From Mytilus trossulus (lineage: Eukaryota), in assembly GCF_036588685.1 (NCBI RefSeq), contig NC_086373.1:372001-436000 (forward strand): a DNA stretch of 64,000 nt, given 5' to 3'. The notes beneath the pieces were generated by a model. That model was not told the origin of the DNA and did not search any database. It saw only the letters and a program-made list of their open reading frames with translations. Made by a program: the position numbers and the translations under genes. This document shows positions 58,772-59,160 of this stretch, piece after piece (position 1 is the first letter of the stretch; each line of letters begins with the position of its first letter).

Positions 58772-58815
58772 GCGTCACTGATGAGTCTTATGTAGACGAA
58801 ACGCGCGTCTGGCGT
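58772..58815 (+). ncRNA. Minimal type I hammerhead ribozyme, cleavage after 58809
   Basis: GCGTCA-CTGATGA-GTC TTATGTA GAC-GAAA-CGCGCG-TC-TGGCGT. Confidence 0.85.
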
Positions 58816-59116
58816 ACTAAATTATAATCCTGCTACCTTTGATAACTATTTACACCACTGGGTCGATGTTACTGCTGGTGGACGTTTCGTACCCGAGGGT
58901 ATCACAACCCCAGTAGTCAACATTTCGGTGTTGACATGAATACCAATAATGTAGTCATTTTTATAAATTTCCTGTTTACAAAATTTTGAATTTTTCGAAA
59001 AACTATAGGATTTTTTTTATCACAGGCATAGATTACCTTAGCCGTATTTGGCACAACTATTGGGAAATTTTGGACCCTCAATACTCTTGTTTAGCTTTCT
59101 AAATATTTTGATATGA

Positions 59117-59160
59117 GCGTCACTGATGAGTCTTATATAGACGAAACGCGCGTCTGGCGT
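59117..59160 (+). ncRNA. Minimal type I hammerhead ribozyme, cleavage after 59154
   Basis: GCGTCA-CTGATGA-GTC TTATATA GAC-GAAA-CGCGCG-TC-TGGCGT. Confidence 0.85.

What the first reader, a model, noticed from the sequence alone, without database searches (positions are those of the whole stretch)
58772..59160. Tandem hammerhead pair defining a 345-nt retrozyme unit, a predicted circular-RNA template
Seen: two intact minimal type I hammerheads 345 nt apart on the same strand, each with a tiny helix III whose sequence ACGCGCGT is palindromic. Established: minimal hammerheads of Penelope-like elements and non-LTR retrozymes cleave as dimers through such palindromes, release unit-length RNAs that circularise, and are probably mobilised by PLE reverse transcriptase. 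I recall mussel retrozyme circRNAs being reported, so the class is probably not new. Inference: this locus is the only one in the window able to excise a complete monomer (58810-59154).
Basis: partly seen in the sequence, partly recalled or inferred. Interest (0 to 1): 0.85.

Follow-up and report, generated by a model that had tools for sequence, protein, structure and literature searches.

The report
Known mussel hammerhead retrozyme copy
This is one ordinary, somewhat decayed genomic copy of the hammerhead-ribozyme "retrozyme" repeat already described in Mytilus mussels. It could in principle release a 345-nt RNA circle, but public RNA data give no sign that this copy is transcribed.

Summary
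Two intact type I hammerheads lie on the + strand at 58772-58815 and 59117-59160. Their cleavage sites (after 58809 and 59154) are 345 nt apart, and helix III is the palindrome ACGCGCGU.

The element is a 449-nt, 1.3-unit insertion (58747-59195) of the published Mytilus galloprovincialis non-LTR retrozyme family (Cervera & de la Peña 2020). That family's primers match this locus with 1-2 mismatches. The genome holds thousands of copies, including long arrays with a period of about 355 nt. The kind is therefore already known, and this scan has noted it elsewhere in the same genome.

Two RNA runs show abundant family RNA, mostly hammerhead-sense. They give zero depth on the unique flanks, and 95-99% of reads carry the family's letter at this copy's private positions. 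Activity of this locus is unsupported.

Side results, not settled:
- Insertions share a fixed 3' end 41 nt past the cleavage site, with variable 5' ends. The template is therefore not the cleaved linear monomer.
- The unit's first ~90 nt resemble the 5' terminus of young Penelope-like elements with an N-terminal GIY-YIG domain, which themselves carry no hammerhead.
- Folding predicts that the two palindromes pair into a double hammerhead.

The parts
58747..59195 (+). Whole insertion: 1.3 retrozyme units, made of a 5'-truncated partial unit followed by one full unit
   Evidence: Self-BLAST and alignment of window copies. RNA reads that run on upstream of 58747 continue into family unit sequence (352 and 433 reads). 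nhmmer with a 63-unit family profile covers 58745-59194.
58747..58850 (+). Partial upstream unit (104 nt) carrying hammerhead 1. It repeats 59092-59195 and is arranged like a Penelope pseudo-LTR
   Evidence: 95 of 104 positions are identical to 59092-59195.
58772..58815 (+). Hammerhead ribozyme 1 (type I), cleaving after 58809
   Evidence: RF00163 at 33.0 bits, E 2.4e-4; own scan.
58801..58808 (+). Palindromic helix III, ACGCGCGT, of hammerhead 1
   Evidence: Read directly from the sequence. It pairs with 59146-59153 in the unconstrained minimum-energy fold of the 450-nt transcript.
58810..59154 (+). 345-nt monomer that double self-cleavage would release (the candidate circular RNA)
   Evidence: Positions of the two cleavage sites. 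Circular fold -72.1 kcal/mol against -63.2 +/- 4.7 for shuffles (z = -1.9); GC 36.5%.
58851..59195 (+). Full unit as defined by the family's insertion termini (starts TACACC, ends ACTATT)
   Evidence: The fixed 3' phase is shared by independent loci.
58851..58940 (+). Block resembling the 5' terminus of Penelope-like elements with an N-terminal GIY-YIG domain
   Evidence: Local alignment score 52. Shuffles give 22.3 +/- 4.4 with a maximum of 41.5 in 2000; random genomic windows give a maximum of 43.5 in 1497. nhmmer E about 0.003 in several element families.
59117..59160 (+). Hammerhead ribozyme 2 (type I), cleaving after 59154. Helix I reaches 8 bp through a private T at 59161
   Evidence: RF00163 at 34.5 bits, above the gathering score; own scan covers 59115-59162.
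59146..59153 (+). Palindromic helix III of hammerhead 2
59155..59195 (+). 41-nt 3' tail between the cleavage site and the insertion's fixed 3' end (...GATAACTATT)
   Evidence: Window copies B, C and E share this end and F ends close to it. So do 13 of the 14 complete independent genomic loci and 16 of 24 insertions in sequence not chosen for the retrozyme. The 25-nt terminal motif followed by a non-T base occurs 2,648 times in the genome, against 0 for the reversed control.

Best explanation
The locus is a genomic copy of the known Mytilus non-LTR retrozyme, a non-coding, non-autonomous retroelement. The copy consists of a 5'-truncated partial unit followed by one full unit, so it carries two same-strand type I hammerheads.

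If the locus were transcribed through, each hammerhead would cut after its GUC (after 58809 and 59154). Folding predicts they would act through an 8-bp helix III formed between the two palindromes. The cuts would release a 345-nt RNA with 5'-OH and 2',3'-cyclic phosphate ends. According to the published work on this family, a host tRNA ligase of the RtcB type would then close it into a circle.

Shown here: the ribozyme anatomy, family membership, the family's abundance and sense-strand expression, and the common insertion architecture. Taken from the literature: cleavage and circular RNA for the family. Inferred: the copy arose by reverse transcription that started at a fixed site 41 nt downstream of the cleavage site, on a circular or longer-than-unit RNA, probably by the enzyme of a Penelope-like element.

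This particular copy is most likely an old, silent insertion.
For: Ribozymes: Rfam hits and pattern statistics and my own structural scan.

Family membership: the published M. galloprovincialis primers 110R and 109R match at 58893-58921 (2 mismatches) and at both hammerheads (1 and 2 mismatches). The published Mg353 construct has a near-identical ribozyme and the same cleavage site.

Abundance: the first look gave 6,243 candidates, and full-length matches at about 90% identity lie in arrays with a period of about 355 nt.

Expression of the family: 6,433 and 7,662 reads were laid from about 6% of two RNA runs. The strand bias is 5-8:1, which fits hammerhead-sense RNA.

Silence of this copy: depth is zero on 58500-58723 and about zero on 59204-59235. 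At the private positions 95-99% of reads carry the family's letter.

Insertion architecture: fixed 3' end and variable 5' ends.

Double hammerhead: the minimum-energy fold of the 450-nt transcript pairs 58801-58808 with 59146-59153, at -102.7 kcal/mol against -89.2 when two separate hammerhead folds are forced. Cofolding two 44-nt ribozymes gives -29.5, against 2 x -5.7.
Against: No cleavage or circular RNA has been measured for this copy. The RNA runs come from a coded organism label that may not be the assembled individual, and only about 6% of each run was read, so low-level transcription cannot be excluded. The reads showed no pile-up of starts or ends at the cleavage sites. The canonical single-hammerhead fold (-5.7 kcal/mol) is less stable than alternative local folds (-11.8 to -13.6).
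Confidence: 0.9

Rival explanations
1. The locus is an active source of circular RNA: it is transcribed, cut at both hammerheads and circularised, and it contributes to the mussel's retrozyme RNA pool.
For: Both ribozymes have intact cores and flank exactly one unit. At each private position 1-5% of reads carry this copy's letter.
Against: Read depth is zero on both unique flanks in two RNA runs, and reads at all listed private positions are dominated by the family's letter. The minority letters also occur in other genomic copies. The copy differs from the family majority at 23 positions and its repeated ends differ at 9 of 104, which points to age.
Confidence: 0.12
2. It is merely satellite DNA: a local tandem duplication produced by replication slippage or unequal crossing-over, with no RNA intermediate.
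For: The family also forms long head-to-tail arrays, which can grow by recombination.
Against: Independent dispersed insertions on many chromosomes end at the same unit phase while starting at variable phases. The terminal motif followed by non-unit sequence occurs 2,648 times genome-wide. Recombination would not fix one end at a single phase.
Confidence: 0.04
3. The two hammerheads are the pseudo-LTRs of an autonomous Penelope-like element, not a separate non-coding element.
For: A partial unit followed by a full unit mirrors the Penelope arrangement, and the unit's start resembles a Penelope-like 5' terminus.
Against: Only 345 nt lie between the ribozymes, with no ORF of 120 aa or more. The Penelope-like elements examined in this genome showed no hammerhead by Rfam at E up to 1 (17 of the 26 loci) or by my own scan (all 26), apart from retrozyme copies inserted nearby.
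Confidence: 0.03
4. The hammerhead matches are chance look-alikes in AT-rich repeat DNA.
For: One of the two matches scores 33.0 bits, just under Rfam's gathering score of 34.
Against: The pattern has three exact matches in the window and none in 100 shuffles. All core nucleotides and all three helices are present. 47 of 63 distinct family units keep the strict motif. A near-identical published ribozyme has measured cleavage.
Confidence: 0.01

Closest known systems
Mytilus galloprovincialis non-LTR retrozymes (Cervera & de la Peña 2020, NAR 48:5054, PMC7229834)
   Same: The hammerhead is near-identical, with the same helix III ACGCGCGU and the same cleavage site; it differs only in loop 2. Unit size is 345 nt here against the published 350-390 nt. 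GC is low and there is no coding capacity. The copies are arranged head to tail. The published primers match this locus. The conserved body blocks can be seen in the Mg353 construct.
   Different: This copy belongs to a subfamily whose sequence after the cleavage site differs from the cloned Mg353 type; reads of the Mg353 type match only 58772-58816 here and then diverge. It has a roughly 14-nt deletion and 23 private substitutions. No expression of this copy was seen.
Newt/axolotl satellite 2 retrozymes and avocado sunblotch viroid 'double hammerheads'
   Same: A short helix III that is palindromic, so that two ribozymes can pair into one extended helix III. The predicted fold of the dimeric transcript does exactly this.
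   Different: Amphibian motifs have a 1-bp or 2-bp stem with a tetraloop and were shown to need the dimer for efficient cleavage. For the mussel family, a construct with a single ribozyme is reported to cleave, slowly.
Penelope-like elements, including the N-terminal GIY-YIG 'Naiad' clade (Craig et al. 2021, PMC8557442)
   Same: Frequent 5' truncation, a partial copy followed by a full copy (pseudo-LTR), and head-to-tail multicopy insertions. The retrozyme unit's start resembles the 5' terminus of such elements in this genome.
   Different: The retrozyme has no ORF. The elements examined here carry no hammerhead. Their 3' termini are not significantly similar to the retrozyme's.
Plant LTR retrozymes (Cervera et al. 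2016, PMC4918200)
   Same: Non-autonomous, hammerhead-bounded, and spread through circular RNA intermediates.
   Different: The plant elements use type III hammerheads inside LTRs of about 350 bp, have a primer-binding site and polypurine tract, have GC above 55%, and depend on Gypsy-type enzymes. None of that applies here.

Membership tests
Metazoan non-LTR retrozyme | Type I hammerhead with an intact catalytic core (CUGANGA, GAAA, RUH) and helices I-III | tested here: met
   Rfam RF00163 at 34.5 and 33.0 bits; own structural scan.
Metazoan non-LTR retrozyme | Hammerheads recur head to tail in short repeats of about 170-400 bp, from dimers to multimers | tested here: met
   Spacing is 345 nt here. 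Genomic arrays have a period of about 355 nt and reach at least 9.7 units within the sequence fetched.
Metazoan non-LTR retrozyme | Non-coding, with low GC (under 45-50%) | tested here: met
   GC is 36.5%. No ORF of 120 aa or more lies in 58747-59195.
Metazoan non-LTR retrozyme | No LTR, primer-binding site or polypurine tract | tested here: inconclusive
   The only direct repeat is the 104-nt partial unit itself. I did not search specifically for primer-binding or polypurine motifs.
Metazoan non-LTR retrozyme | Expressed as unit-length linear and circular RNA | tested here: inconclusive
   The family's RNA is abundant and mostly sense-strand in two runs, but reads do not come from this copy, and short reads laid on a tandem reference cannot prove circularity. 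Circular RNA is shown for the family in PMC7229834.
Metazoan non-LTR retrozyme | Self-cleavage of the ribozyme in vitro | not testable with these tools
   Only published data for a family member are available (kobs about 0.1 per min).
Published Mytilus retrozyme family specifically | Sequence homology to the cloned M. galloprovincialis elements | tested here: met
   Primer 110R matches 58893-58921 with 2 mismatches. Primer 109R matches both hammerheads with 1 and 2 mismatches. Chance expectation is 0 for both.
Penelope-like element pseudo-LTR hammerhead | The ribozyme sits in the terminal repeat of an element that encodes reverse transcriptase with or without GIY-YIG | tested here: not met
   There is no ORF between or next to the ribozymes. 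The nearest ORF with a domain is an RNase H fragment at 57317-57772 on the other strand.
Plant LTR retrozyme | Type III hammerheads inside LTRs of about 350 bp | tested here: not met
   The best Rfam model is type I, and the open helix is helix I.

The most novel reading that the evidence does not exclude
The mussel retrozyme may be the non-coding partner of young Penelope-like elements with an N-terminal GIY-YIG domain (Naiad-like), which themselves lack hammerheads. Its unit begins with about 90 nt homologous to those elements' 5' terminus. Every insertion ends at one fixed site 41 nt past the ribozyme cut. The 5' ends may cluster about 27-40 nt upstream of the ribozyme, which would make the 1.3-unit, two-hammerhead form seen here the standard full-length product. 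On this reading the integration template is a circle or an uncleaved longer-than-unit transcript, never the cleaved linear monomer.
Probability: 0.35. Interest if true: 0.5.

Novelty: already known. Interest (0 to 1): 0.2.

Why it matters
The locus itself adds nothing new. It is one of thousands of copies of a retroelement family whose ribozyme activity and circular RNAs in mussels were published in 2020.

What could matter is the family-level anatomy that came out along the way. A fixed integration end that does not coincide with the ribozyme cut constrains which RNA form is reverse-transcribed. Similarity to the 5' terminus of hammerhead-less Penelope-like elements nominates a concrete helper element for an invertebrate retrozyme. 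So far, terminal similarity of this kind has been reported only for Xenopus retrozymes and Penelope pseudo-LTRs, in a 2026 preprint (10.64898/2026.07.22.740005).

Tried and rejected
- Tandem Repeats Finder did not report the 345-nt repeat, because only 1.3 copies are present.
- I found no target-site duplication by eye at 58746/58747 and 59195/59196.
- The similarity between the 3' termini of the Penelope-like elements and the retrozyme is not significant: score 16 against 17.7 +/- 3.6 for shuffles.
- A 29-nt match to the retrozyme's 3' end occurs in the 3' UTR of the 965-aa element family. It lies about 415 nt inside that element, not at its terminus. It could be a very short 5'-truncated retrozyme insertion rather than shared ancestry.
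- Pfam found only GIY-YIG in the 965-aa ORF, with no reverse-transcriptase domain. The PDB sequence search with the 1056-aa ORF found nothing. The Atlas neighbours that combine GIY-YIG and RVT_1 are only a lead.
- Rfam at E up to 1 (17 of 26 loci) and my own scan (all 26) found no hammerhead belonging to the Penelope-like loci.
- The reads gave no start or end pile-ups at the cleavage sites and no usable back-joints. Joints in the DNA contig run X2 are repeat artefacts.
I used the primers and inspection by eye instead.
- The run of N at 26901-27063 was left untouched.

Full report
**1. The observation**

The sequence shows two near-identical 44-nt motifs on the + strand at 58772-58815 and 59117-59160.
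- Rfam's type I hammerhead model RF00163 matches the second at 34.5 bits, above its gathering score of 34 (E 7.6e-5).
- It matches the first at 33.0 bits, just below the cutoff (E 2.4e-4). Both matches cover the whole model.
- A pattern joining the catalytic core to helix III occurs three times in the window and never in 100 dinucleotide-preserving shuffles.
- My own rule-based scan finds CUGAUGA, a 4-bp helix II with a 5-nt loop, GAAA, the palindrome ACGCGCGU, the GUC cleavage triplet, and a helix I of 6 bp (first copy) or 8 bp (second copy).

The window holds about ten copies of this ribozyme region. Only three are intact; the others carry core changes such as AUGAUGA, GGC at the cleavage site, or CCGAUUUG. 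The third intact one (20628-20671) stands alone. The claim that this is the only locus in the window able to release a whole monomer is therefore correct.

**2. What it is**

The pair sits in a 449-nt element, 58747-59195. It consists of a 104-nt partial unit followed by one full unit.

The genome is 1.30 Gb in 541 contigs. The 450-nt query gave 6,243 first-look candidates. Full-length matches at about 90% identity lie in long head-to-tail arrays with a period of about 355 nt on many chromosomes.

This is the family described by Cervera & de la Peña (2020, PMC7229834) in Mytilus galloprovincialis:
- about 5,000 type I hammerheads in repeats of 350-390 bp;
- a cloned genomic repeat that self-cleaves at about 0.1 per min;
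- circular RNAs of unit length, abundant in gonad and mantle.

Their construct Mg353 shows the same ribozyme, differing in loop 2, and the same marked cleavage site. Their primer 110R matches 58893-58921 with 2 mismatches, and primer 109R matches both hammerheads with 1 and 2 mismatches; chance expectation is zero.

GC is 36.5%, and no ORF of 120 aa or more lies in the element. Membership in the published family is therefore well supported, and the kind is already known. Earlier notes of this scan reached the same verdict for other windows of this genome.

**3. Is this copy active?**

I laid two raw RNA-seq runs, one PacBio transcript run and one DNA run on 58500-59450 at 90% likeness.
- The RNA runs gave 6,433 and 7,662 reads from about 6% of each run, all on repeat sequence.
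- Depth is zero on the unique left flank (58500-58723) and essentially zero on 59204-59235.
- I had defined 23 positions where this copy differs from at least 80% of 111 other family alignments. At every one listed in the read table, 95-99% of reads carry the family's letter. For example, 516 of 531 and 1,090 of 1,120 reads show G rather than this copy's C at 58833.
- The strand bias on the unit body is 5-8:1, while the neighbouring repeat shows about 1:1. This fits mostly hammerhead-sense RNA.
- No pile-ups of read starts or ends appear at the cleavage sites.
- Reads that run off at 58816 and 58772 continue into the Mg353-type subfamily, so that subfamily is expressed too.
- A 583-nt contig of DNA run X2 spans the left junction without any difference, so the insertion exists in an independent sample.

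Conclusion: the family is strongly expressed, but nothing shows that this locus is. Two caveats apply. The runs carry a coded organism label that may differ from the assembled animal, and short reads on a tandem reference cannot demonstrate circles.

The copy also looks old. Its two repeated ends differ at 9 of 104 positions, and it has a roughly 14-nt deletion relative to other copies.

**4. How it would work**

The single-hammerhead fold is weak: -5.7 kcal/mol, against -11.8 to -13.6 for alternative local folds.

The unconstrained minimum-energy fold of the 450-nt transcript pairs 58801-58808 with 59146-59153. That is an 8-bp helix III formed between the two ribozymes. The fold has -102.7 kcal/mol, against -89.2 when two separate hammerheads are forced. 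Two isolated 44-nt ribozymes cofold into the same domain-swapped dimer at -29.5 kcal/mol.

Two other hammerhead variants in this genome have different but equally perfect 8-nt palindromes: AUGCGCAU at window 17900-17941 and AUCUAGAU in L054. A 2-bp stem with a tetraloop would not need this, so pressure for pairing between ribozymes is plausible.

The circular monomer is only modestly structured (z = -1.9). Closure of the circle by an RtcB-type ligase is taken from the paper, not tested here.

**5. Insertion architecture (family level)**

Units are numbered from 58851 (TACACC...) to 59195 (...ACTATT).

- *Fixed 3' end.* Of the 14 independent genomic insertions that lie wholly within the fetched loci, 13 end at phase 343-346; the exception is the array at C12:58.22 Mb, which ends at phase 295. 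Four window copies end at 344-346 and a fifth at 339. In sequence not chosen for the retrozyme, 16 of 24 insertions end within the last 11 positions (345-355) of the 355-position family profile, where about 0.7 would be expected. The 25-nt terminal motif followed by a non-T base occurs 2,648 times in the genome, and the reversed control occurs 0 times.
- *Variable 5' ends.* Start phases range from 1 to about 280.
- *What this implies.* The fixed end lies 41 nt downstream of the ribozyme cut, and no cluster of starts is seen at the cut. The template is therefore not the cleaved linear monomer. It must be a circle primed at one site, or an uncleaved transcript longer than one unit. This is inference.
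- *A possible 5' hotspot.* Starts may cluster at profile positions 236-250. In the unbiased set, 4 of 24 fall there against 1 expected (P about 0.02). Three further 1.3- or 2.3-unit copies (L002, L019, L026) also start there, but my search favoured such copies. If the hotspot is real, the two-hammerhead 1.3-unit form is the standard full-length product.

**6. Link to Penelope-like elements**

A search for GIY-YIG domains found many multi-copy ORFs of 900-1,060 aa. In the 965-aa and 1,056-aa families the domain lies at residues 179-271 and about 183-273. It is therefore N-terminal, as in the Naiad clade (PMC8557442).

Copies are 97-99% identical to each other. They occur as a partial copy followed by full copies, and one has a short tail. 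They are therefore young elements. A reverse-transcriptase domain was not confirmed by Pfam or the PDB, and the Atlas neighbours that combine GIY-YIG with RVT_1 are only a lead.

Similarity at the 5' end:
- The first 100 nt of these elements align with the first roughly 90 nt of the retrozyme unit, with both alignments starting at the termini.
- The score is 52, against 22.3 +/- 4.4 for shuffles (maximum 41.5 in 2,000) and a maximum of 43.5 in 1,497 genomic windows.
- The family profile finds the same block in at least four element families at E about 0.003.

No match at the 3' end:
- The 3' termini are not significantly alike.
- These elements carry no hammerhead.

A 2026 preprint reports terminal similarity between retrozymes and Penelope pseudo-LTRs in Xenopus. 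I found no report of this for mussels or for Naiads. An earlier follow-up of this scan saw a comparable resemblance for a different, 560-nt retrozyme family of this genome.

**7. Verdict**

The object is an ordinary and probably silent copy of a published family, so its interest is low. The family-level side results (fixed integration end, possible 5' hotspot, Naiad-like 5' homology) are leads worth a proper genome-wide census.

Noticed in passing
window 17900-17941 (+): A hammerhead of a different family: core CUGAAGA, helix II GACA/UGUC, palindromic helix III AUGCGCAU. Rfam missed it even at E up to 10. The surrounding 17620-18210 is a diverged retrozyme-like unit, and 17838-17971 is 90% identical to 32292-32425. 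The same ribozyme type, with palindrome AUCUAGAU, occurs twice 548 nt apart in L054 (422-465 and 970-1013).
   Followed up: partly
window 20385-20706 (+): A 5'-truncated 0.9-unit copy of the same retrozyme, with a third intact hammerhead (20628-20671, 33.0 bits) and the same 3' end. Having one ribozyme only, it cannot release a unit.
   Followed up: yes
window 5015-5290, 8030-8205(-), 10977-11172(-), 15828-16114(-), 24773-25124, 29524-29670(-), 32505-32821, 63836-63918: Eight more decayed copies or fragments of the retrozyme family. In every copy where the ribozyme region is present, its core is mutated.
   Followed up: yes
window 59248-59768, with copies at 16304-16828(-), 7033-7512(-), 24454-24715, 33118-33502(-), 35006-35187(-): A different dispersed repeat starts 50 nt downstream of the retrozyme. 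It is high-copy, and RNA reads cover both strands about equally. Its copies carry a SECIS-like motif: 16305-16369 at 31.7 bits against a cutoff of 35, and 35089-35153 at 22.4 bits. Selenoprotein-encoding Naiad elements are reported from clams, so this may be worth a look.
   Followed up: no
window 57317-57772 (-): An ORF of 151 aa with an RNase H domain (Pfam E 5.3e-6), probably a remnant of another retroelement about 1 kb upstream of the retrozyme.
   Followed up: no
window 30684-31514 (-): An ORF of 276 aa with a rhodopsin-family 7TM receptor domain (Pfam 7tm_1, E 4.3e-32), most likely a host GPCR exon.
   Followed up: no
L047 (G000:C10:30943000-30952999), L048, L051, L043-L046: Young Penelope-like elements with an N-terminal GIY-YIG domain and intact 965-1,060-aa ORFs. 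Copies are 97-99% identical, sit in head-to-tail tandems (period 4,277 nt in L047), and have tandem repeats of about 270 nt in the 3' UTR. They appear to have been active recently.
   Followed up: partly
G000:C1:282316-297962 (-), about 75-90 kb upstream of the window: A long retrozyme array. Hit spacings are multiples of 355 nt, and its internal unit junction reads ACTATTC instead of ACTATTT.
   Followed up: no
window 33046-33123: A long, near-perfect inverted repeat that gives weak chance-level matches to microRNA precursor models on both strands. It is probably a hairpin-forming repeat, not a microRNA.
   Followed up: no
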